Assembly: GCA_907165135.1 (NCBI GenBank)
Contig: OU015566.1
Location: 6,820,001-6,884,000 of the forward strand
From: Oikopleura dioica
Lineage: Eukaryota; Animalia; Chordata
Reading direction: 5' to 3'
DNA length: 64,000 nucleotides
Part shown: one piece after another, positions 26,052-39,080 of the stretch
How positions within the stretch are numbered: position 1 is the first letter of the stretch
Layout: each line of letters begins with the position of its first letter
Notes under the pieces: generated by a model
The model's input: only the letters and a program-made list of their open reading frames with translations
Database searches by the model: none
Told to the model about the DNA's origin: nothing
Position numbers and translations under genes: made by a program

Positions 26052-26759
26052 CTAATATGGAGGTCGAGGGCCGACAATCGTAACATTCAATCGGATGAAT
26101 TCTCCATCGGTGCGCTGGAACTTCACTTGCTGCTTTTGAGGCTGCGGATAGGTGTGAGATACTGGACTCCAGTTTTCTTGATCATGGCAGTCCACAAGCT
26201 CGCTGGTCAATTCTTCAGACGAATAGACGTGTTGGTCTTTTGATGAAAGTTGTTCGACGGACACACTTATTTTTGGAGAATCTCCTAGAATTCTGTTAGC
26301 ATAGGTTCATTTTAAAGACAAACGATTGAAAAGAGGAGTTCTTCCCATAGAAAAATAGTAATTGCCGTTTCCACCGGCACTTTGCAATGCACTCTTGAAT
26401 TGAACCATCCAACAATTGACATCGACACGCAAGTTTTGATCAGCACGAAACTAAAGAACTTGAGACGCTCTTTGAACTTGGACGGAACTAACTTTGAAAT
26501 TGACTTTTGATGCGCGATTACCGATCAGTGCTAGAACTTTCACTAGTGCTTCCCTATCCATTTCATTTCTCGGACCACCAGCAGTCACTTCTCGGTCGTC
26601 GCCTCGATAATGACCAGATCCTCCTAAATTTCCGACACTTTTCTGAGCAGCAGCTAACGCTCGTGGAATCTCCTCGTCAGGAAAAGATTCCATAGTAATA
26701 GCATTTCTATAATGACTATCCATATCTGGTCTGATATCCATTGTCATACGACCTGACAT
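26052..26759 (-). CDS. Uncharacterised protein (about 3 exons)
   Basis: Three coding-like segments join through plausible introns, including a 42-nt GTTAGT...TTTAG intron that removes the apparent stop at 26451. No family recognised. Confidence 0.5.
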
Positions 26760-27987
26760 TTTAAAATTTTCGTAAATTGATCTCTTCGCTAAAAGTTTCA
26801 ACTTGCTGCAATACTCGATGGTGGTTGCTATTTATGTGCATCAGCACAAATATTTTTCAGCAGATTGATATCGTTACTATTGAAGCTGCTCCTACTCTTA
26901 CCTTCCTAGGATTGTTTGAAAGTGTTTATTTCAATTAAGACAGAAGGGACTATTAAGAGCTCAAAATTGAATCAACCAATTTCTATCAAAATCTTCTTCG
27001 CAAGTTTTCATCAAAGAACTTGCTGAGTTCAAAAAACGGGCAAGCTTAGCGAAAACTTGCTTTCTCCCGATTTCGGTAACCTTTTGAGAAAGAGTGAAAG
27101 ACATCTTTCAGTTACCGTATGCTCTCATTAAACAGCCAAGGGGACGCTACCTTGTTCTATTCGTACCTATCTTGCGTTCCTATCTGCCGCTTTTCCGTAG
27201 AAGCATCAGATATGATAAAAAGAGACGAGCTTGGCGAGAGCAGTTGTTTTCAAGACAGCCAAACAGATGTGGTCATTTGGGGATTGAGTCTTATAGGAGC
27301 TACCGTTTTCGTGGCAACTAGTAAAGTGAGCTTACTTTTGCACTTTATCGAAGACAAAAGATGGTACGGTGACTTCATGACTTTTGCGGTCACTCTAGCG
27401 ATGGGAACGATGTTTGCAGTGACTATCTTTCAGTTTATTCCAGAGAGCCTTCATTTTCTCCATGTCCAGGTTTAATCAATTTATCACCAAACAATAAAAT
27501 ATTTCAAGACGTACAATGTCTCTTGTGAGAGCTGTCACAAAGGCTTTTGGGCAAGCAGTATTGTTGACCGACATAATTGCTTGGCTATTTGCAGCATGGA
27601 ACAATTCGAAAGAAGTGAGCTTTACAGAATCGATGTCGGAGGTTCGAAGAAAGGGTTTCTTTTTTTTAACGATTTCAGGCGCTTCGTCTTTCATGAGCAC
27701 AATGACCGTCTCATACTTTTTCTTCATCGTCGTCTATGATGTCCAAAAGATCATCCAATGCATATTCTCTAGGGAATACACTACCCGATCTACAGATATA
27801 GAAGAAAGAATACTGAAAACATATGGCAGCAAAGAAGCTTTTAATTGTGACCGGACATGTTCAGAGCCGTGCACTTGCCAGGAAACTCATTTTGTCGAAT
27901 CCCGCATCAAAATAAGCAACTCAGTTGGGGCTAGCGCTAATGCTGAGGGCCGTAGACGAAGCACTTTTCGCTTGAAAGCTCAGGATT

Positions 27988-28446
27988 GGCCGGAAAAATA
28001 TAAATTTTTCGCCTTCGAACAGCCATAGCTCACGCTATACTATATGAAACCAAGGGATGAAGGTATCTTTCGAAAGCTCAGCTTCTGAGGATTGGGGGAA
28101 CGTAAAAATCATTTCGGAAAATCGACATTTCTGATTGGCCGAAAATTTGAAATAACTATTTTTGCCAGTCAACATCAACTTTTTTCAAATGTTTTTTCTT
28201 TCCCCCAATCCATAGAAACTGAGCTTTTTAAAAATGTATCAATCACGTGATTTCATTATCTCTCACGTGAGATATGGCAGTTCGTAGGAAATTCATAAAA
28301 ATGGTCTCAGAATCGCCCCAGGCAATGAAAAAAAGTTTTTTCCAGGTGATTTCTAGGTTTTCGATGATGAATAAAACGATCAACATAATGATTTTCCCCC
28401 TAGTTGAAATTTTTGTCAAAATCGAAAATTTATATTTTTTCCGACC
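27988..28446. mobile_element. 459-bp MITE with about 24-bp imperfect TIRs and a 3-bp ATT duplication
   Basis: The left end is GGCCGGAAAAATATAAATTTTTCG; the reverse complement of the right end is GGTCGGAAAAAATATAAATTTTCG. ATT lies at 27985-27987 and 28447-28449. The element is absent from copy B, and removing it restores QDWKFVNTDAW. Confidence 0.85.
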
Positions 28447-29305
28447 ATTGGAAATTTGTTAATACTGATGCATGGGTTATTCTTTTGACCACATCTTTCG
28501 AGTGCCTCATTGAAGGTATGCCGTACACAAATTAGTTCATTACTGTATTTCTCCAGGAATGGCCTTCACGCTGACATTGCAAGACGATATCACTGCTGGT
28601 TTTTCAGTTCTATTTGCGATGCTATTAAAGATGATACCAGTACGAATCTATGAGTCTCACATGACATGACCTTATTTAGCAAAAACTCGGGAACGCCGTG
28701 ATCTTGATGCGCTCTGGCCTGTCTCCTTTTTGTCAAAGTGCTTTGGTTCTCACTTCAGTGTCTGCTATCTATCCAGGCGTTTGTATCGCGATGCTTCTTA
28801 GAAATATGCACATAAAAGCAGCTGTAAAGGCCAAGTTCTTGAGAGAGGCGATTTTCTGGCAGTTAGATTTTCTGGCAGTTAGACTTTCTGGCAAAGGCGA
28901 TTTTCTGGCACTGCCAGAAAATCTAACTTCCAGAAAATCGCCTTTGCCAGAAAATCTAACTGCCAGAAAGTCTAACTGCCAGAAAATCGCCTTTTTAGTA
29001 TGCATATTATTTGAAACTCTGCAAAAAACTATTTTTAATAAAATCATTTATAAATTCGAAAAACTGGTGATTATCACACAAATTTCATTCCGGAGCAGTT
29101 TCAGCAGGAGTTTGCACCTTTCGACGGGAGCGTTTGATCTAAAAGCCGACTATTCAGGGCGCTAAAAAAGACGACGAATTTGGAATTGAAATTTCTGCGC
29201 TAAAAATAGAATGAGGGCAGCATCCACAGTTCGTTCTTGCTATTTTCGGAGTAACAAACGGGTTAACAGGCAGCTGAAAAGTTAGATTTTGATTTTTCTG
29301 AGAAA

Positions 29306-30227
29306 ATGGAGGATGATGAAGAGAATGCGGATAGAAAAATGTTGAAACTGACACCGATTCCACCACCTTCTGAGGAAGAATTTTCAGGATAGTTTTATAA
29401 CAAGTTCAGTTTCAAAAAGCATTTGCGTGCGCCATTATCTCAGTGGGTGCTCACTGTGACCAAGTACTCGAAATCAGATGCAAACACCGGGTGATTAACA
29501 CAGAAATTCCCGGAAGAAGCTGATTTATGTTTGCTACAGCTATTAATCTTGAATAAATGGGTCAAAAGTGGCCTTTGTCAATGAATTTTTATAAAACGTG
29601 TAAGAAAACATTGGTGGTACTGTCGAAAACCCTGCCTTGGTAACGATTCAACGAAACTCAAAAAACAATGCATCCTTCCTCGTCAAAGTTGCTTCCAGAT
29701 CATTTGCTTTCAAAGCAAGAAAAGCGAAGAAAACGATTCTGCATTCTAAAAACGACGATCCTGACTTCCGTTTCAAGATGCGAGTCGAGTGTGAAAATCA
29801 ATCATATTCGAAAGACGCTTCATTCCGCTGTTCAACGAAGATTTGGATGTTTGCAAAAGTTGTTGATATGGAATCTCCTCGTTTTTTTGAGCTCAGCAAT
29901 TGGCGATGTGGAAAGCTAGAGTCGAAAGTAGACATTCACATGAATAAATGTCTGAAGAACGATGCACTCGAAAAGAAGCGATTACAGTACGCAACGACTG
30001 TGTCCATGCTCAACAGGAACCAAATTCGCCCAAAAAGTCAACAGACAATTCGTGGAGAAGTTCAAAAAGATTCACAACTTTCGAGCATGGAAAGAGGCAA
30101 TCTTTTCACGAAAAAGGAGATGAGACGTCTTGCTCAGAATTCCAGAAAGTACGAAAGAAAAATAAAGGCCGCTACAGTTCCTGATCCTCGACGCTTGGAA
30201 GACTGGATGACAGTACTAGGAAAGTGA
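29306..30227 (+). CDS. Probable N-terminal (DNA-binding) part of the MULE transposase
   Basis: An ATG exon (MEDDEENADRKMLK...) and a 196-codon ORF with a C-x12-C...H-x3-C arrangement and a basic RRLAQNSRKYERKIK...PDP segment, on the same strand as and upstream of the DDE core. The assignment is an inference. Confidence 0.5.
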
Positions 30228-30689
30228 TTTATTTGACCGAGCACAGATGCACGAAAGAAATGACAGTGAATATAGTTTAGTTAAATCTTGAGTTGAATTA
30301 TCCTTTAGAGCTTGGGACATCCTTGATACGGTAGAAAAGCAGAGGCCGTGCGTTCTTCTTTTTCCTTTGTCTTTCCCTGAACTAACATAAATTCGAAGCC
30401 GCAAGCGGCTTCTCTTACGATGCAGGAGTTCTTGGGGCTTCGAGGACCCGAGCAGCGGGAGCTCCAGCTCGAGCGGGTGCTTTCTTTGCTGTTGTAGAAA
30501 CTGCAGCGAATTTGAAGCGGGAGTCACACCAGCGTTCGCTCTCGCATGAACGGGACCAAGAGGTTCTCCCTTTGAAATCAGAATTGAAAAAGGATTTCGC
30601 GTTCTTTTTGATTTACCTGATAGTTAGCGTCGAAAAACTTTTTAAACCATTGAACGAAGTGTGAGACACTTGACAGTGGTGAAAGGAAA

Positions 30690-31712
30690 TTACTTTGCAT
30701 GACGTTGTCGCCACGGAAGCAGATTTCTCCTTTTCCTTCGCGCGCATAATAATCCATGTCGGGCACGTCAACAAGTTTAAAAAATATTAGCCATCGGCAA
30801 ATAGCTGAACCAGACGTCGCTTGTTTTCCAAGGCTCTTTAACCGAGAAGATTGTAATGCCACAGCAGACGGTGCAGATGTTCTTGTGAGTCAAGACGACG
30901 CCTTTCGGATCGCCAGTCGTGTCGGATGTGTAATTGATCGTAGCAATGTCTGAATAATGAAATTAAATGATCGCCCCTATTTTTATCATTTTTACCTGAA
31001 GAAGTCGGCGGAACATTATCAAACGAGCTGTCTTTTCCGATTGCAATAAAATCGTCGAAACTTATGATTTTATAATTGGAGGACTTGACCTTCTTGAATT
31101 TTCGAAACACAACGATTGTTTGAAGATGAGCAGGCTTGATTTTGAGAATGAGGTCAAGTTTCTTTTGATTTTGAACGAAGCAGATTGGAGCTTCAATCTG
31201 AAGAAAAAGTAAAAATAATCTCGTAAAGAAGTTGTAAACTTACGTGCTCGAGAATGTATTTGACTGCTTGTTCACCAAAAGTATCGTAAAGCGAAACATT
31301 GCATATATTTTGATAGTATCCTCCAATGATTACTGCGTCGTATTCGTAGCAATTCGACGAGTAGATCGCAATTTTGCTTTCTCCACTGATAAGTCCGTGC
31401 TTTTTCAGTGAATTCGCCAGGTATTGAGATGTTGCAGCGAACTCGCCATAAGTACGGGTCGTGTAATCTGTCAAATCTGGCGTCGGAGTGCCTCAAATGA
31501 TAGCATTATCACTGGCGGTCTCTCTTCCTCGCTGGAAGCACTCAAGAATTGTCTGAATAACTGTAAAGAAAGTTCTGAGTGATACGCTTTACCTGTGGAT
31601 AATCAGCTGGCAGAGTCCAGAGTCCTTTCTTCTCGCAGAGAATATTGTGTCTTGCGAAGGTTTCAGAATCTGCTTCATAACTTTGTGGCGCGTCAACGTA
31701 GTCTAATTTCTT
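30690..31712 (-). pseudogene. Decayed long-chain acyl-CoA synthetase (ACSL-like) fragment inside the MULE
   Basis: TILECFQRG; KIAIYSSNCYEY; VSLYDTFGEQAVKYILEH; IATINYTSDTTGDPKGVVLTHKN; WFSYLPMA; KLVDVPDMDYYAREGKGEICFRGDNVMQ. Introns are retained. It has an in-frame TGA, a G-to-D change in the P-loop and a large internal deletion. Confidence 0.92.
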
Positions 31713-32012
31713 GTTTCTGTGTAGAGTTATAATTTTGATGAAGACAAACCTTATCTACGCCCATTTTTTTTGAACGAGTTTTGCAAGACTTTGAAGTTAT
31801 TGACATATTCGTGCTCGTGTTTTGCATTGTACTTTACTGTCTTTAGTCGGATGGAACCTAAACCAAATGTAGCTTGATTAAAAACGATTCGAAAGATGAG
31901 GGGTAAGGTGGAGACAACGAGGACATCATTTTTGTTTCACGAAACGAACATTGAAAAGTAATAATTCATTAATAAATCACGAAAAGGCGATGGTGAAACA
32001 AAATGGATTCTA

Positions 32013-33368
32013 ATGAATGAGTTTCTTTCGCCGGAACAACGAAGCCCGATATGGGATGAAGCTCTAGCTTTTGCGACTCAACACGATTTGCGCATGCTGA
32101 CCTCTTCAAAACACTGGTTTGTTGACGGTAAATTCTTTACGAAAGGCCAGCAAAAGAAGTTTGGCTACCGTCAACTCCTCATTATTGGATCAAGAGACCG
32201 AGATGATAGTGTTAATCCTAGATTCTTTATTATTCTCAAGGGTCAGTCTAAAGAAGGCTACAAGATTGTCTTTGAGGCTTTAAAGGAAATGATCAATATT
32301 GAAAATTTTGAACTTACTTGGTTCGGCAGCGAATTTGTCGTGTGTAATAACGTTGATGAGGACCACAATCGGCCGTTCGGTAGTTTTGAATAGCAGAGCA
32401 GCCGATTTTCCTGAAAAAACTGTAAATTGATCTACAAAAAGAAACTTTGTCCTGATTCTGAATTTACAACTGTCTCGTCCGATTTCGAACCTGGGCTCAG
32501 AAATTCGATTCGCGAAACATGGCCGGAGAAGAATCTACGCATGGTTGGGTGCTACTTTCATTGGTTACAGAGTGTTAGAAGATATTTACAAAGTCATGGA
32601 CTGTTGGCACTCTGGGAGAAAAATGGAAAGATACTCCAAGCACTCATCCATGCGATCCCATTCATTCACTTGACCGAACCTACATTCTACGACACATTTA
32701 TGCAGCTTTTGCGTCGAACACTTGATGAACTGTCTACACCACTAATCAAAGACGAGATTAATGAGTTCTACAGATATCTTTCTACGACGTACTTGAATGA
32801 CGATGCTAAATTCCCTCCTAGTTCATGGGCCCTTGCATTATCGATAGGAGCGAGGAATGGTTCAAAATTCTTGACTAATAACAGTCTTGAAATCATGGTA
32901 AGTTACCTTTTTTTCGATGGGAAATCTTGTAAAAACATCGAATTCGTGAAGATGCGATTCCAACTAAAATTAAATGTTTAGAACTCATCCCTGGTGGATC
33001 AAGGAATCAACAATGCGACAGAGCTATCTACGGTCATCTCCATTGCTAATGGCTTTAAAAGTGAAAGCTTCAGTACGGAAATTGCTAAGCTTGAGAGCAA
33101 CAGCCAGCAAAGTACTAAAAATGACAGATTGTGCGCCTTAGTTGCGGTTGTACGCTACGAGCAGCTAGCAAGATTTGACAAAAAATGCGCAGAAAATGGC
33201 TCAATCGAAGAAGCAATTGTTTCTGTCGGCTTCGGCTTGATGAGGGCCAGATCAAAGGCCGAGTCATTGAAATCTACTCAGAAACTCCGACATTTTATCA
33301 ACAACGCCACGCAACCAGAAACTGCTGTATTTCAAAATTTGATTAAAGAATCAACAGCTGACGTATAG
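32013..33368 (+). CDS. MULE DDE transposase catalytic region (with introns)
   Basis: WFVDGKF (D1), SSDFEPGL (D2), GCYFHW (CxxH) and TNNSLE (E), preceded by ALAFATQHDLRMLTSSKHW. Confidence 0.92.
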
Positions 33369-33424
33369 TTACTATTTTTTATACAAAAATAAAAATTATT
33401 TAGTCATACCAGTTTCAAGAAGCA

Positions 33425-34556
33425 ATGCCTGTGATGTCCCCAGTTCGCGATGAGCAAGAAACAGCTGGTGAGCAAGTTGACCCAGATCCTTTCGCTCAGC
33501 AAGGAGGAGAATTCGATTTGAGAAGAGTTGCGGCGCCAATCGCTCAGCCAGTTCAAAGAGTGGAAAGAAGAGTCGATGAGGAGACGAGCAATGATGAAGT
33601 CGATGTGCCAGCTGTTATCCATGAGTTCGACCCACCTCCAGTGGACTCTTTACCGTCGGACAATGAGGATCGTGAGCCTGAAAACTGTAATATATCAAAA
33701 ATGTAAATATCAAAAATTTAATATTTCTAGTTGAAAAATCGCCATCTCCAATACATTGGGAACGACTTCTGGATAAAACCGATGAGATAGATGAAACGAT
33801 CAGAAAACAGTTTCCAAATCGTCCTTCGTCTTCAGAATCGGAGCAAGGTAACTGTCCATATTTAAAAAATAAATGACTTTCATTTAAGAAAATGACGAAG
33901 CCGGACAAGCTAATCGTTCTCGTCCAACATCTGATTCTTACCGGAATTTTGATGACAGAACTAGTCCCGAAAAGCTGGTTCTATCTGAACCCAAGCAGCC
34001 ACGGAAGTATATTCGCAGCGCAAAATCCGCAAAACAGCGCAAAACGCGGGATCTTTCATTGTCAGATTCTGAATCGGATCGTAAGTTTAGTTTTATCAAG
34101 CAGAATGTTAATTATTCTAGATGAGCGCCCCGAATCTTCGCAAAATACGCGTAGTTTGTGCGCAAAAGTGAAGCGGAATGCGAAAAAATCAACCTATTGC
34201 GAGCATGATTCCCCACCAAAAAAGAAAAAGAAGAAAACTGAAGCCGAAGTGCGTTTGGCAGCCCAAATTGCGAAAGAAAAGAAAATTCTTAAAGAAAGAA
34301 ATCGAAAAAAAAGAGAAAATGATCCTAAGGTAATGCTTGTATGTTTCTTTAAGAAAATAGCAGAATATTTAGGGCTACTATGCTGATATAGCAAATAAAC
34401 GGCGTCAAACCATTCAAAGAAAAAAAAGAACAAAATGAAGAGTTGATCGCAGAGTTACGGGAAGAGCTGGAAAAAATGAAGGCGGAAAATGCGAAATTGC
34501 GAAAACGCGAAGAAATGAGAAAAGCAGATATCCCAGGATTGTTTACACGTATATAA
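33425..34556 (+). CDS. MULE-borne accessory gene: acidic/Pro-rich N-terminus, poly-Lys NLS, C-terminal coiled coil (about 5 exons)
   Basis: Segments MPVMSPVRDEQE..., EKSPSPIHWERLLDKTDE..., DSPPKKKKKKTEAEVRLAAQIAKEKK..., EELIAELREELEKMKAENAKLRKREE...* are separated by short GT-AG introns. Confidence 0.65.
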
Positions 34557-34746
34557 TGGTTTCTTATTTAATTGTATTTAATTAGAATAACTTGATAAAT
34601 AATAAAAAGACGATGACGATTTGATGCGCCAATTAAAAGAAGTACTCGCCACTTCCGACGAAGAAGACTTCTGATGTTCTATAAAAAAAGCTCCTTACAT
34701 TTTCATCAAACTCGTTACATTCGTTACGGACGATTTCCATAGGTCA

Positions 34747-34999
34747 GAGCCGTTACAAAATTACCGGGGCAAACTTGCTGTTGCTCTAGCGCCTAAGGGT
34801 TACATTGTAGCCCAAGACATCTTTATACGTATCGACGGAGAATCTCAAGCTCTATGCCAGTATCATCTCAGATTTTCGAGATCTCAAAAAATTTCGGATT
34901 TATGGCGATTTTTCATTTTTCAAAGGACTACGTGTCCCTAATTCAGCCAATCACAGCACTGTATTTGACGCATTTGCACCGGTAAATTTGTAACGTCTC
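34747..34999. mobile_element. Nested 253-bp inverted-repeat element inside the MULE
   Basis: GAGCCGTTACAAAATTACCGGGGCAAA versus right-end reverse complement GAGACGTTACAAATTTACCGGTGCAAA (24/27). No clear TSD. Confidence 0.55.
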
Positions 35000-36534
35000 A
35001 GTTAATTGAAGCCGCTGAAAAATAAACCAATAAGTGAAAAAATTGATTGCAAAAGAAAATTCGAAACTCCTTTCCTATATATTTTTCTTCTTCGTTGGAG
35101 CTCCTAAAGATGGAATCGAGCACGTCGTTTTGTTGATTCATCGAGTTCCTAGAATTCGGAAGCTTTCTTTGTTGTCTGCGAGAAGAATACTGGCAGGAAG
35201 TTCTTCAATATCTTTCGAGGAGTTCAAAATCATGTTAAATTAAAGAAAGGGCACAATTATAACGGGTAAATTCTTCTGGAGGCCCACAATTATAACGGGT
35301 TCAATATTCTCCCCGTTGTTATTTTATATGGTCAATTTTCAACACTGAGTCCTTTCTGAAATTGAAATTCTGAATTAAAATTTAAAAATGATAGACAGTA
35401 TTTTAGTTTCGCAACTCGTAAAGCTTTAATGTCAAAAATTGAAAAAAAATAGAAACATTTAACTTATCAACGGTTTGTGCATCGAAAGAGAGAAGAAAAC
35501 GCATCATACATTAAATACGAAAGGTTGAAGTTTGGAGGCGAAACAAAGCGGAAACACAGTTCATAAGTTTTAAGCGAATTGGGCAAAATTTTATAGGCAG
35601 TTAATTCTTCTCTAATTCCTCTGGCAGTTAATTCTTCTCTGATCTTCATCATTTCCGCTTGAAAAAAACCGTTGATTTATCAACTAAATTCAGGCGAGCA
35701 CAGCGCGGCGAATAAGGGAGGAGCGCGCCGCCCACGCGCGCCTGACTATTTCTCAGAAGAATCAGAAGATGAATTCCGAGCTCTTCTTCTCTCCGTTTTT
35801 TTATCTTCCAGGATCATTAACTATAGATGTGAAATCAAAAGAGGCGATTTTCTGGCAGTTAGACTTTCTGGCATATTAGATTTTCTGGCATTGCCAGAAA
35901 ATCGCCTTTGCCAGAAAGTCTAACTGCCAGAAAATCTAACTGCCAGAAAATCGCCTCCCTCCAAGTTCTTTGCGGCTCTTGTTGGAATGTTTCTTTACCT
36001 TTCCTTGGCGAGGATGTTTCCTGCCATGCAGGTGAAAATATTAGATCGTACACGGGTAATAAAAATCATAGGAGCTTGTGGATGCACCGCCAAAAGAAAG
36101 CCGAATGTCTGTCAATTCATATCGTCAACAGACAAAGCGTAAAACTTTCAGGCGTTTGTTCATTGCTAATGTTGGCTATGTCATTGCTTTCTTCATCCTA
36201 GCTCCTCTCGTAAGCTTGTTTTCTAAGGATTAGAGTGATTTTTAGATTTATTATGAAAATCAAATTCAACAAAAAATCGAAGAAATCATCTGCGGTGACA
36301 ATTAAAGATCGTATTTGTCTGTATTTCTGGAAAGCAATAAATTCATAATTAGAACATGTTGACGTCGACTGCCGACTCTTATTTTTTCTGACTTTTGAAG
36401 CAAACCGAAAGACATCTTATAGTGACCCAGGACTCTCATTAATGACCCAAGGGAAACATTCCTCGTCTTATCGTTATTTCAAAGCATATAAAGCAGGGTT
36501 CATTCTCAACCATCGCATTTCGGAAAACGCAGGG

Positions 36535-37983
36535 ATGATTAAAAGAGACGAGCTTGGAACGAGCAGTTGTTTCCAGGACAGTCAAACAGATGGGGTTATT
36601 TGGGGACTGAGCCTCGTTGGCGCAACAGTTTTCGTAGCAACTAGCAAAGTGAGTTTACTCTTGCACTTTATCGAAGACAAAAGATGGTACGGAGACTTCA
36701 TGACGTTCGCGGTCACTCTCGCGATGGGAACGATGTTTGCAGTGACCATATTTCAGTTTATTCCAGAGAGTCTCCATTTCCTCCACGTCCAGGTTGTACT
36801 ATTAATCTTTTGAAAAATAAAGGAAGTCAAGACTTACAACGTCTCTTGTGAGAGCTGCCACCAGGGCTCTTGGGCAAGTAGCATCGTTGATCGGCATAAT
36901 TGCTTGGCAATTTGCAACAGGGAGAAATATCAAGGCAGCGTATTGTACAGAATCGATGTCGGAGGTTTGTCAAGAGATGATTAATTTGATTTTTAACAAT
37001 TTCAGGAGCTTCGTCTTTCATGAGCACAATGACCGTCTCGTACTTTTTCTTCATCTTCGTCTATGATGTCCAAAAGATCATCCAATCCATATTCTCAAAA
37101 GAATACAACAGCGGATCGAACTACAAGCGGCTCGACAGAAGATCCACAGTCAAAATAAACAACTCGGTCGGACTTGGTGCAAACGTCACCGATAGAAAAC
37201 CAAGAAGAAGAATTGCAAAAGAAAACACTTCTGGATTGAAAGCTCAGGACTGGAAATTGATTGATACCGATGCTTGGGTGATTCTTCTGACGACATCTTT
37301 TGAATGCTTTATTGAAGGCAAAGAAAAAAGTAGATTGCTTCGTTACCCTAATTTTCCAGGAATGGCCTTTACGCTGACATTACAGGACGATATTGGGGCT
37401 GGCTTTTCAGTTTTATTTGCGATGCTATTAAAGATGATCCCAGTAACAATCGACGGTTCTGACATGACTTAACCTTATTCAGCAAAAACTCGGCAACGCC
37501 GTGATTTTAATGCAGTCTGGTCTGTCTCATTTCTGGGAAAGTGTTCTTGTACTAACTTCAGTATCGGCGATATACCCAGGTGTTTGTATCGCGATGCTTC
37601 TCAGAAATATGCACATAAAAGCAGCTGTAAAAGCGAAGTTCTTCGCTGCTCTCACTGGGATGTTTCTGTACATTTCACTAGCCAGAATGTTTCCAGCCAT
37701 GCAGGTGAAAAAATGTCATAAAAACATCTGATGGAAATTTTAGGAACTCGTGGATGCACCGCCAAAAGAAAGCCGAGTCTCGGCAAAAGCATATCATCAA
37801 CTAGCAAAACGCAAAGTATACTGGCGTCTATTTATTGCTAACGTTGGATTTGTCAGTGCTTTCTGCATTCTAGCACCTCTTGTAAGTACCTTGGTATTTC
37901 TTTGGAATCAAAAGATTCTTTAGATTTATTATGAAAACAGCATCCAAGAAAAAATAGAAGAAATCATCTGCGGTGAAAATTAG
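36535..37983 (+). CDS. SLC39/ZIP LIV-1-like membrane protein, copy B, apparently intact, with a non-canonical metal site
   Basis: TM2 TFAVTLAMGTMFAVTIFQFIPESLHF, TM4 AWVILLTTSFECFIEGMA, TM5 LKMIPQKLGNAVILMQSGLS and TM7 FFAALTGMFLYISLARMFPAM align with the ZIP8/ZIP14 pattern. Confidence 0.88.
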
Positions 37984-38349
37984 GCCCTATTTACTGAAAT
38001 TCATAAATATATATTGAGTATGTTTCGTATATTTGTGTTTTATTCGGAAAAAAATCCTTCATTATGAATCATAACATTTTCTTAATTATAAATCATAATC
38101 TATTAGTTGTTGATTTATTTAATAACTTTTTCCTACGAAATCCTTTACGTTTTCCCCATCGAAATAAGATCATTTGTGGTTGCATTTAGGAAAAAACCTT
38201 CTGGATATGTGATGACGTCACATACCTTCACCTTGATTGGGTTTGCCTGTTCCGAAGTTAGACTTTTGTTTAAAAGAATAATTTAAAATAGGGGACTGCC
38301 TTAATCGTCGTTAAAACGTTGCATCGGCTGCTAATTTCAAAGTTCAATA

Positions 38350-39080
38350 ATGAGCAAAATCAACGAAGAGGATGAGATTTATTACGCGGAATTAGAGACA
38401 TTTGTGGACCAAAAACTCAATATTTTTGAACTGAAGAAAACCATCCGAGAAAAGCTGAGCGAAGAGATTGATGAGACTCGCGAAAAAATAAATGCCATTA
38501 GAGGAGAAAATTTGAAAAAAGAAGAGTCTATTCTCAAAATCGAGCAACTACGTTCAATTATGATACAAGAGCAAGAATTGGAAAAAGCTCGGGAAGAGAT
38601 GTTGGAAGAAAGTCCATTTCTCCAAACATTATTCGGTGGATATGCTCATACACGAGTTTGAAAGATTCGCTTTTTGATCATGAGATTTCAATGTTTCTAT
38701 TAGAATAAAATTTCAAACTCATTGATAAGTACCCTTTTGAAACGGACTGGCTCCAAAGACGAGACAAAAAGATGGACGAGGAGATCGAAAAAATCCGAAT
38801 GCAGATAGAGAACAATATCACCAAAATTGCAGTCCTAAAAGTTAATTTGTGTGAACTGAAGGATCCCGAAAAGTTGATGGCTGCTGCATCAGATTCACTT
38901 CCAACTTGTTCTATTTGCTTGGAGCGATACAATAAAGAAGATCACTTGGAGTCTGTTCTTACTACTTGTGGACACAAATTTGGGCGATCTTGTATCGAGA
39001 AAAGCTTGGAAACCAACGAATACTGCCCCAAATGCAACAAAATTTCCAAAAACCAAAATGTTCTCACTATATTTGAATAG
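38350..39080 (+). CDS. Coiled-coil + C-terminal RING protein (RFWD3-like CGHxFGxxC RING)
   Basis: CSICLERY...VLTTCGHKFGRSCIEKSL...CPKC, preceded by a long coiled coil. Homologous to 53780-54542. Confidence 0.8.

What the first reader, a model, noticed from the sequence alone, without database searches (positions are those of the whole stretch)
37270..37510. ZIP family member with metal ligands erased and charge-reversed
Seen in both copies, aligned by eye to the ZIP8/14 pattern: TM4 SDGLHNFIDG becomes TTSFEC(F/L)IEG and TM5 CEEFPHELGD becomes LKMIPQKLGN. The TM5 acidic and His ligands become K, M, Q, K and N, while the surrounding TM scaffold (P, LG, VIL, GMFLY) is conserved. The TM3-4 loop of copy B has no His. 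Known: these residues form the binuclear M1/M2 transport site of ZIPs. Inference: this is a ZIP-fold protein that no longer carries divalent cations. It could be a pseudo-transporter or regulatory partner, or a carrier of an anion or other solute. The same substitutions in two diverged paralogs argue against random decay.
Basis: partly seen in the sequence, partly recalled or inferred. Interest (0 to 1): 0.78.

Follow-up and report, generated by a model that had tools for sequence, protein, structure and literature searches.

The report
ZIP8/14-derived protein with lysine-filled metal site
These tandem Oikopleura dioica genes belong to a conserved, undescribed offshoot of the ZIP8/ZIP14 metal transporters that keeps the transporter fold but has two invariant lysines where the metal-binding residues were, so it probably no longer carries zinc, iron or manganese the usual way.

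Summary
Copy B (36535-37983, +) is an intact 7-exon, 401-aa gene. It reads TTSFECFIEG in TM4 and LKMIP|QKLGN in TM5, where ZIP8/14 have GDGxHNxxDG and CEExPHELGD. A profile alignment to BbZIP gives H177→E, N178→C, E181→E, Q207→K, D208→M/L, E211→Q, G212→K and E276→R/S.

This is not decay:
- dN/dS between copies A and B is 0.105.
- Against the Bergen ortholog (CBY43330.1), pN is 0.096 while synonymous sites are saturated.
- The genome holds two more paralogs on another chromosome.
- A scan of 1.84 billion proteins found 44 clusters of the same type. Spliced mRNA contigs carry the motif.
- The two lysines are among the most conserved columns (22/23 and 21/23).

A careful tree puts the clade (100/100, stem 3.4 substitutions/site) inside ZIP8/14, sister to vertebrate ZIP8/14. 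A homolog model superposes on BbZIP at Z 17.

- TM4 is not erased. It keeps Glu-Cys-x-x-Glu.
- Copy A is broken by a MITE and a 7.1-kb MULE, and has lost the family's TM6 motif.
- Several relatives keep a His-rich loop.

Loss of metal transport and any new substrate are inferred, not shown. Expression of copy B could not be tested. The scan had separately flagged a 'pseudo-ZIP' elsewhere in this genome (s1-357735).

The parts
36535..37983 (+). Copy B: intact 7-exon gene, 401 aa. Exons 36535-36792, 36832-36964, 37006-37317, 37360-37442, 37483-37704, 37744-37881, 37924-37983.
   Evidence: Gene model. Intron positions match the GenBank model of the Bergen ortholog CBY43330.1 on L046. Pfam Zip hits on exon 1 (E 8e-4) and exon 5 (E 1.3e-5).
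37290..37370 (+). Copy B TM4 site TTSFECFIEG|MAF, with the GC-AG intron 37318-37359 inside. E230, C231 and E234 stand where BbZIP has H177, N178, E181 and human ZIP8 has H314, N315, D318.
   Evidence: Family counts: E 14/16, C 14/16, E 16/16.
37428..37497 (+). Copy B TM5 site LKMIP|QKLGN, with intron 37443-37482 inside. K259, M260, P262, Q263 and K264 stand where BbZIP has Q207, D208, P210, E211, G212 and ZIP8 has E343, E344, P, H347, E348.
   Evidence: Family counts: K 22/23, P 22/23, Q 21/23, K 21/23.
37516..37542 (+). Copy B TM6 start, SGLSHFWES. This is the family-specific conserved motif (consensus GLNHFWEN), absent from canonical ZIP8/14.
   Evidence: Family counts: H 20/25, F 22/26, W 22/26, E 23/26.
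37657..37704 (+). Copy B TM7, GMFLYISLARMFPAMQ. R330 replaces the ZIP8 D410 / BbZIP E276 acid. A334 replaces the E of the PEM motif.
37825..37842 (+). Copy B start of TM8, RLFIAN. R364 is invariant in the family (15/15) where canonical ZIP8/14 have V or L.
36832..36964 (+). Copy B exon 2: extracellular TM2-TM3 loop with four conserved Cys. It is predicted as a beta-hairpin in the homolog model.
37924..37983 (+). Copy B last exon: family-specific C-terminal helix IYYEN.IQ..IE.IIC with a conserved Cys. Canonical ZIPs end at TM8.
   Evidence: (C398 10/11).
27212..36305 (+). Copy A: coding pieces 27212-27469, 27509-27641, 27679-27989, 28452-28515, 28557-28639, 28680-28840, 35971-36031, 36072-36209, 36246-36305. 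It reads as 422 aa, 84% identical to B, only after two transposons are excised. Its TM6 motif is degenerate (P, C, Q for H, W, E).
27990..28451 (.). A 462-bp MITE inserted in exon 3 of copy A. It has 24-nt terminal inverted repeats and is flanked by ATTGG on both sides.
   Evidence: At least 15 full-length copies in the genome at 77-98% identity.
28841..35970 (.). A 7.1-kb Mutator-type element inserted in the TM7-coding exon of copy A. 9-bp target duplication CAAGTTCTT.
   Evidence: Scan note s1-348282.

Best explanation
Copy B, with its paralogs and orthologs, encodes a selected, working membrane protein. It descends from the chordate ZIP8/ZIP14 (SLC39A8/A14) metal/bicarbonate symporters. It keeps the eight-helix ZIP fold, but the binuclear metal centre has been rebuilt into a set of fixed charges.

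Shown here:
- The M1 ligand positions now read Glu (TM4), Glu (TM4, the bridging residue), Lys and Gln (TM5).
- The M2 positions read Cys (TM4) and Met/Leu (TM5).
- A second invariant Lys follows one residue later in TM5.
- The TM7 acid is Arg or Ser.
- All of these residues are near-invariant across the clade.

Inferred:
- A Lys side chain at a metal-ligand position would put its ammonium group roughly where the metal ion sits. The two Lys would therefore act as built-in cations, paired with the two retained TM4 glutamates.
- The site would then be unable to bind or carry Zn, Fe, Mn or Cd in the canonical way. Two of the three residues that are indispensable in human ZIP8 (N315, E344) are gone.
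- The strongest constraint lies in the transport-domain helices TM4-TM6, not in loops or at a dimer interface. So the site is most likely still the working core of a carrier with a non-metal substrate.
- The leading candidate is an anion such as bicarbonate, the co-substrate of the ZIP8/14 ancestor.

Copy A is a recently disrupted duplicate and is probably decaying.
For: - Intact 401-aa ORF with canonical tiny introns.
- omega 0.105 between A and B at dS 0.88.
- pN 0.096 against saturated pS 0.74 versus the Bergen ortholog.
- Four paralogs in the genome.
- 44 of 47 significant hits among 1.84e9 proteins are of the same type. The other three are EExPHELGD ZIP8/14 proteins.
- Pfam Zip scores above the cut-off.
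- BbZIP residue map.
- Column counts showing K259 and K264 among the 24 most conserved of 186 core columns.
- The P0048 cluster carries K at position 230 together with E at 264, a charge swap.
- The clade has 100/100 support and is sister to vertebrate ZIP8/14 at 96/85.
- No canonical EExPHE locus was found in the genome.
- A homolog model with pLDDT 90-97 in the TM helices matches BbZIP at Z 16-17.1.
- The spliced mRNA contig L045 maps at 100% identity onto genomic L048 across introns. One metatranscriptome member exists.
- ZIP8 mutagenesis, and bicarbonate placed next to M1, H347 and D410 (PMC12753238).
Against: - No transport, binding or localisation data exist.
- No coordinates were available, so the Lys-Glu contacts are inferred from which BbZIP residues share a metal. 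They were not measured.
- TM4 keeps Glu, Cys and Glu, and TM6 offers His and Glu. A non-canonical metal site is therefore conceivable.
- Several relatives keep a His-rich cytosolic loop.
- P0009 has Glu at both 230 and 264, which does not fit a simple 230-264 ion pair.
- The good structural model used an alignment dominated by canonical ZIPs, so it may simply inherit their fold.
- Expression of copy B itself is unproven. Three oligo-dT runs gave five partial reads and there was no positive control.
- The anion idea rests on ancestry and analogy alone.
Confidence: 0.45

Rival explanations
1. Pseudo-transporter. The protein no longer moves any solute. It acts as a regulatory or scaffolding subunit, for example by pairing with canonical ZIPs, or as a receptor-like protein that uses its family-specific extracellular Cys-rich hairpin and C-terminal helix.
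For: - The canonical ligands are lost.
- There are new conserved extracellular elements: four Cys in the TM2-3 loop, plus a C-terminal helix with an invariant Cys.
- A charge-neutralised core could lock the protein in one conformation.
Against: The highest conservation is in the buried TM4-TM6 site residues and the new TM6 motif. A pure scaffold would not need that. No partner evidence exists, and no complex test was run.
Confidence: 0.25
2. It is still a cation transporter with a remodelled site. Glu-Cys-x-x-Glu in TM4, with His/Glu of TM6 and in some members a His-rich loop, would bind a different or softer metal, or a monovalent ion or proton, with the lysines tuning affinity.
For: - Three possible ligands are retained in TM4. 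Cys is conserved 14/16.
- His-rich loops are kept in P0013, P0011, P0018 and P0027.
- BbZIP naturally has Glu at the D318 position and Gln at the E343 position.
Against: - Two protonated lysines and, in the A/B/C clade, an arginine sit in a site that must hold a cation.
- The M2 acid E344 is lost, and its mutation kills ZIP8.
- Met at position 260 is not conserved. Most members have Leu.
Confidence: 0.12
3. Non-functional relic: a decaying pseudogene family, or a gene-model artefact.
For: - Copy A is disrupted by two transposons and has lost the TM6 motif.
- Its branch is about 6 times longer than B's.
- No RNA reads of copy B were recovered.
Against: - Copy B, C and D have intact ORFs.
- omega is about 0.1 or lower.
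- The same residues are kept over relatives only about 36-44% identical.
- Spliced transcripts exist for two family members.
- The GenBank model has the same splicing.
- No alternative exon encodes canonical motifs.
Confidence: 0.03

Closest known systems
Vertebrate ZIP8 / ZIP14 (SLC39A8 / SLC39A14), metal/bicarbonate symporters of the LIV-1 branch
   Same: - Sister group in the tree (96/85) and nearest canonical hits in the database scan.
- Same eight-helix order and long cytosolic TM3-4 loop.
- Shared scaffold motifs: W before TM4, xxxG after the TM4 site, P and G in TM5, SG at TM6, GxFLYxSL and FP in TM7, NxG in TM8.
   Different: - All of H314, N315, E343, E344, H347, E348 and D410 are replaced, by E, C, K, M/L, Q, K and R/S. 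D318 becomes E.
- No N-terminal ectodomain.
- New Cys-rich TM2-3 hairpin, new TM6 motif GLNHFWEN, invariant Arg at TM8 and an added C-terminal helix.
- The stem branch is about 3.4 substitutions per site.
BbZIP (Bordetella bronchiseptica ZIP; PDB 5TSA, 7Z6M, 8GHT)
   Same: The family profile matches it at E 2e-5 over TM4-TM7. The homolog model superposes at Z 16-17.1, rmsd 3.2-4.0 A over 197-220 residues. Glu at position 181 is shared.
   Different: H177, N178, Q207, D208, E211 and E276 are not shared. Sequence identity is about 17-19%.
ZIP13 / Drosophila ZIP13 (altered TM4 motif DNxxH; iron export into the secretory pathway)
   Same: It is a precedent that changes in the ZIP core motifs go with a change of substrate or direction (PMC5797780 and PMC11685566, listed). 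O. dioica has such a locus too, with DNFTHG (L018).
   Different: ZIP13 keeps metal-ligating residues throughout and still moves metals. Here the TM5 ligands are replaced by lysines and a hydrophobic residue.
ApcT Lys158 (LeuT-fold amino-acid transporter), where a lysine amine takes the place of the Na2 ion of sodium-coupled relatives
   Same: It is a functional analogy for the proposed mechanism: a tethered amine sits where relatives bind a cation, and transport is retained. That K158 takes the place of the Na2 ion of sodium-coupled relatives is my own knowledge (Shaffer et al. 2009). The cited review (PMC5983779) describes K158 only as the residue whose protonation and deprotonation governs the ApcT cycle.
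   Different: The fold and family are unrelated, and a monovalent site is replaced. Nothing comparable was found for ZIPs in the paper searches.

Membership tests
ZIP / SLC39 family (Pfam PF02535) | Match to the Zip profile above the curated cut-off (35.1 bits) | tested here: met
   Bergen ortholog of copy B (P0057) scores 59.6 bits. P0053 scores 80.7, P0061 96.2, P0013 75.3 and P0048 43.1. Copy B could only be scanned exon by exon: 19.1 + 25.1 bits.
ZIP / SLC39 family (Pfam PF02535) | Eight-TM ZIP fold as in BbZIP | tested here: met
   AF2 model of homolog P0053: pTM 0.71, TM helices at pLDDT 90-97. BbZIP entries match at Z 16.0-17.1 across model residues 15-456; the next chain scores Z 6.6. 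Caveats: this is a homolog, not copy B itself, and the alignment included canonical ZIPs. A first model from family members alone was poor.
ZIP / SLC39 family (Pfam PF02535) | Binuclear metal centre ligands: TM4 H-N-x-x-D/E, TM5 (H/E/Q)-(E/D)-x-P-(H/E) | tested here: not met
   The protein has E-C-x-x-E and K-(M/L)-x-P-Q-K. Only the bridging acid and the proline are kept.
ZIP / SLC39 family (Pfam PF02535) | Divalent metal transport activity | not testable with these tools
   Needs uptake assays.
LIV-1 subfamily, ZIP8/14 group | Signature (H/E)ExPHExGD in TM5 | tested here: not met
   The motif reads K(M/L)xPQKxG(N/D/Y/H).
LIV-1 subfamily, ZIP8/14 group | Phylogenetic placement within the group | tested here: met
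   IQ-TREE LG+C20. The clade plus all ZIP8/14-type rows has support 96/91. Sister relation to vertebrate ZIP8/14 has 96/85. The clade itself has 100/100. Caveats: long stem branch and limited sampling of other LIV-1 groups.
LIV-1 subfamily, ZIP8/14 group | His-rich cytosolic TM3-TM4 loop | tested here: inconclusive
   Absent in copy B (0 His). Copy A, copy C and the Bergen ortholog have 1 His. P0013 has 11 His in the last 60 loop residues, P0011 has 8, P0018 has 6 and P0027 has 5.

The most novel reading that the evidence does not exclude
This would be the first ZIP-fold carrier whose substrate is not a metal. The ZIP8/14 ancestor co-transported M2+ with bicarbonate. On this reading the lineage made the cation permanent, with two tethered lysines and in some members an arginine at the D410 position. 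That would leave a metal-independent, elevator-type transporter for bicarbonate or another small anion, or for protons. It would have spread by duplication in appendicularians and replaced canonical ZIP8/14 there.
Probability: 0.25. Interest if true: 0.85.

Novelty: new variant of a known kind. Interest (0 to 1): 0.62.

Why it matters
ZIP transporters are defined by their binuclear metal centre. N315, D318 and E344 of ZIP8 are conserved in almost all ZIPs and are indispensable there (PMC12753238). A whole clade under purifying selection that swaps this centre for lysines and glutamates is a natural experiment on what the ZIP elevator fold can do without a metal.

- It offers ready-made mutants for testing how charge in the centre drives the transport cycle.
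- It tests the idea that a tethered amine can stand in for a bound cation, which is known in LeuT-fold carriers but not in ZIPs.
- It asks how O. dioica manages Mn, Fe and Zn if its ZIP8/14 orthologs no longer carry metals.
- It warns that homology-based annotation as 'zinc transporter ZIP8' would be wrong for these genes.

The only named database member is an 'unnamed protein product'. Five full-text searches of the paper library turned up no description of it.

Tried and rejected
- **PDB sequence searches.** phmmer with the exon 3-4 and exon 5 pieces, and with full-length P0053, gave no hits. Only the family profile reached BbZIP.
- **RNA evidence.** No indexed RNA run holds the locus. Reads of three oligo-dT runs and one single-cell run laid on 35900-38100 gave five partial reads at 90-95% likeness. 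Synonymous sites between O. dioica lineages are saturated, so reads from another lineage would not map at 90% or more. There was no positive control. This is therefore no test of expression, neither for nor against.
- **Word-index protein search with P0053.** It found only one relative, P0061.
- **First AF2 model, from family members only.** It was poor (pLDDT 58.9, pTM 0.40). BbZIP ranked first but not above background: Foldseek E about 1 and VIA Z 7.9. Foldseek on the second model also gave only E 0.1-0.5, though all ten top rows were BbZIP.
- **Run and assembly accessions in papers.** Searching for them to name the source organisms of the environmental relatives gave nothing. 'Appendicularian-specific' is therefore an inference.
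- **My first exon 2 frame** gave a frame clash at intron 2 and was discarded for the frame that gives GT-AG introns in both copies.
- **Mis-splicing hiding canonical motifs** is rejected.
- **No complex prediction was run**, because I do not claim a binding partner.
- **Not possible here.** Exon references and the database orthologs P0057 and P0053 were used instead.

Full report
**What is in the window**

The genome is 64.3 Mb in 19 contigs. An earlier scan note names the species as Oikopleura dioica. Reading 27000-39000 and a tblastn of my first model show two tandem genes on the + strand.

Copy B has exons 36535-36792, 36832-36964, 37006-37317, 37360-37442, 37483-37704, 37744-37881 and 37924-37983. 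It gives an uninterrupted 401-aa ORF. Its six introns are 39-42 nt, five GT-AG and one GC-AG.

Copy A starts at 27212 and ends at 36305. It is interrupted twice inside coding exons:
- A 462-bp MITE at 27990-28451 has 24-nt inverted ends and at least 15 full-length copies elsewhere in the genome.
- The 7.1-kb Mutator-type element at 28841-35970 has a 9-bp target duplication and was already noted by the scan.

With both elements removed, copy A reads as an intact 422-aa ORF, 84% identical to B.

Copy B reads TTSFECFIEG (37290-37319 across the intron) and LKMIP|QKLGN (37428-37442 and 37483-37497). Copy A reads TTSFECLIEG and the same TM5 string.

In MAFFT alignments with three canonical proteins found by the database scan, these strings lie on GDGxHNxxDG and CEExPHELGD. 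One of the three is named ZIP8.

A profile of the family matches BbZIP at E 2e-5 to 5e-5. The printed alignment gives a residue map in BbZIP's own numbering:

| BbZIP residue | This family |
|---|---|
| H177 | E |
| N178 | C |
| E181 | E |
| Q207 | K |
| D208 | M/L |
| P210 | P |
| E211 | Q |
| G212 | K |
| H275 | A/S |
| E276 | R/S |
| E280 | A/V |

In human ZIP8 the corresponding residues are H314, E343 and H347 (M1), N315 and E344 (M2), D318 (bridge) and D410 (TM7). N315, E344 and D318 variants are inactive (PMC12753238).

So the TM5 half of the site is replaced, with charge reversal at two positions, and the TM7 acid is gone. The TM4 half is not erased: it becomes Glu-Cys-x-x-Glu.

No frame on either strand of 26500-38300 encodes a canonical motif. 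Splicing therefore cannot restore it.

**It is a ZIP**

Exon by exon, copy B hits only Pfam Zip: exon 1 at E 8e-4 and exon 5 at E 1.3e-5.

P0057 is GenBank CBY43330.1, an 'unnamed protein product, partial' from the Bergen O. dioica assembly. It is the ortholog of copy B, with the same intron positions. It scores 59.6 bits against a cut-off of 35.1. Full-length relatives P0053 and P0061 score 80.7 and 96.2.

An AF2 model of P0053 built from family members alone was poor. With 94 sequences, including canonical ZIPs, it reached pTM 0.71 with TM helices at pLDDT 90-97. That model superposes on eight BbZIP entries at Z 16.0-17.1 and rmsd 3.2-4.0 A over 197-220 residues, covering all eight helices. 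The next chain scores Z 6.6.

**It is under selection and is a family**

- Nei-Gojobori for A versus B gives dN 0.093, dS 0.88 and omega 0.105. Omega is 0.02-0.09 in exon 1 and in TM4-TM7.
- Copy B versus the Bergen ortholog gives pN 0.096 with pS 0.744, which is saturated.
- The genome has two more paralogs on contig 1. C has TTAFECLIEG / LKMIPQKLGN. D is about 50% identical and has CISIECLIEG / IKLIPQKLGD.
- A profile of the exon 5 region, scored against 1.84 billion representatives, found only 47 proteins at E ≤ 0.001. Forty-four are of this type. Three are EExPHELGD ZIP8/14 proteins.
- The 44 come from ENA, Logan, JGI and one marine metatranscriptome catalogue. Of the 20 clusters whose members I looked up, only the O. 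dioica entry is named to a species.
- P0053 (469 aa) lies on a 1.5-kb contig that maps at 100% identity onto a genomic contig across introns of about 44-742 nt. It is therefore a spliced mRNA.
- P0061 (624 aa) is a full-length transcript-like contig orthologous to paralog D.

Across the family the substituted residues are themselves conserved:

| Residue (B numbering) | Conserved in |
|---|---|
| E230 | 14/16 |
| C231 | 14/16 |
| E234 | 16/16 |
| K259 | 22/23 |
| P262 | 22/23 |
| Q263 | 21/23 |
| K264 | 21/23 |
| G266 | 23/23 |

K259 and K264 are among the 24 most conserved of 186 core columns.

New family-specific conserved features are:
- GLNHFWEN at the start of TM6;
- an invariant Arg at the start of TM8 (15/15);
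- four Cys in the TM2-3 loop;
- a C-terminal helix with a conserved Cys.

**Origin**

A careful IQ-TREE analysis (LG+C20, 29 rows) gives the clade 100/100 support on a stem of 3.39 substitutions per site. It sits inside the ZIP8/14 group (96/91) as sister of vertebrate ZIP8/14 (96/85). That placement is what tunicate-vertebrate kinship predicts.

The canonical ZIP loci of O. dioica carry HExPHE, DNFTHG or gufA-type motifs. Neither a Pfam scan nor a fish ZIP8 query finds an EExPHE locus. The clade therefore looks like the derived ZIP8/14 ortholog group of this lineage.

Sampling of other LIV-1 groups was thin, and the stem is long. Placement is supported but not beyond doubt.

**How it most likely works**

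Shown: the four M1-ligand positions now hold Glu, Glu, Lys and Gln. The M2 positions hold Cys and Met/Leu. A second Lys follows in TM5. The TM7 acid is Arg in the A/B/C group and Ser/Thr elsewhere.

Inferred: residues that share one metal ion in BbZIP lie within a few angstroms of each other, and a Lys side chain is about one bond longer than Gln. The ammonium of K259 should therefore sit close to the former M1 position, paired with E230 and E234. K264 may reach the M2 side.

One cluster (P0048) has Lys at 230 together with Glu at 264. This charge swap hints at a direct pair. P0009 has Glu at both positions and does not fit.

The protein would then carry its own positive charges where ZIP8/14 hold M2+. 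A comparable case is the lysine amine of ApcT that takes the place of the Na2 ion of sodium-coupled relatives (my own knowledge; PMC5983779, describes K158 protonation and deprotonation as governing the ApcT cycle).

Constraint is greatest in the transport-domain helices. I therefore favour a still-working carrier with a non-metal substrate. ZIP8 co-transports bicarbonate, which modelling places between M1, H347 and D410, so an anion is the leading guess.

This last step is inference only. The rivals are:
- a non-transporting regulatory or receptor-like protein;
- a remodelled metal site using Glu/Cys/Glu, with the His-rich loops that several relatives keep.

**Copy A**

Besides the two transposons, copy A has Pro, Cys and Gln where the family has His, Trp and Glu in TM6. 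Its branch is about six times longer than B's. It is probably a decaying duplicate.

**Not settled**

Expression of copy B could not be tested. The organisms behind the environmental relatives are unknown. No coordinates, transport data or localisation were available.

Another reader of this scan flagged a 'pseudo-ZIP ... two by lysine' on another piece of this genome (s1-357735). It is presumably paralog C or D. I did not see its coordinates.

Noticed in passing
window 27990-28451: A 462-bp MITE sits inside exon 3 of copy A. It has 24-nt inverted ends and ATTGG on both flanks, and the family has at least 15 full-length copies at 77-98% identity. It does not look like a spliceable intron, because there is no AG at its 3' end.
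   Followed up: partly
window 37318-37359 versus 28516-28556 and L046:417-456: The same intron is GC-AG in copy B but GT-AG in copy A and in the Bergen ortholog. This is a small example of non-canonical donor use in O. dioica.
   Followed up: no
L041 (G000:C1:4392000-4398500) versus the window: Intron turnover among paralogs. Copy C lacks the intron between exons 2 and 3 of A/B. It has extra, larger introns in exon 1, in the loop and before TM8. Paralog D and P0053 share an intron after the TM6 ...Y.G that A/B/C lack.
   Followed up: partly
window 28713-28740 (copy A TM6): Copy A reads SGLSPFCQS where the family has GLNHFWEN, so three near-invariant residues are lost. Its tree branch is about 6 times longer than B's. 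This suggests relaxed constraint on the transposon-hit copy.
   Followed up: partly
whole genome G000: No canonical EExPHELGD (ZIP8/14-type) locus was found. The canonical ZIP loci carry HExPHE, DNFTHG (ZIP13-like, L018) or HNIPEG (ZIP11/gufA-like, L005).
   Followed up: partly
window 38351-39000 and beyond: The gene downstream of copy B encodes a coiled-coil protein with a RING-like Cys/His motif (CSICLERY...CGHKFGRSC). The Bergen ortholog contig instead has a mitochondrial-carrier gene downstream (L046), so local synteny differs between the lineages.
   Followed up: no
L043:3001-4071 (Logan SRR29022242 contig): Relative P0013 is encoded as a single 356-aa ORF without introns from the loop to the C-terminus. 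Just before TM4 it keeps an 11-His repeat (HGADHGADHAADHGADHSADHEEHH).
   Followed up: no
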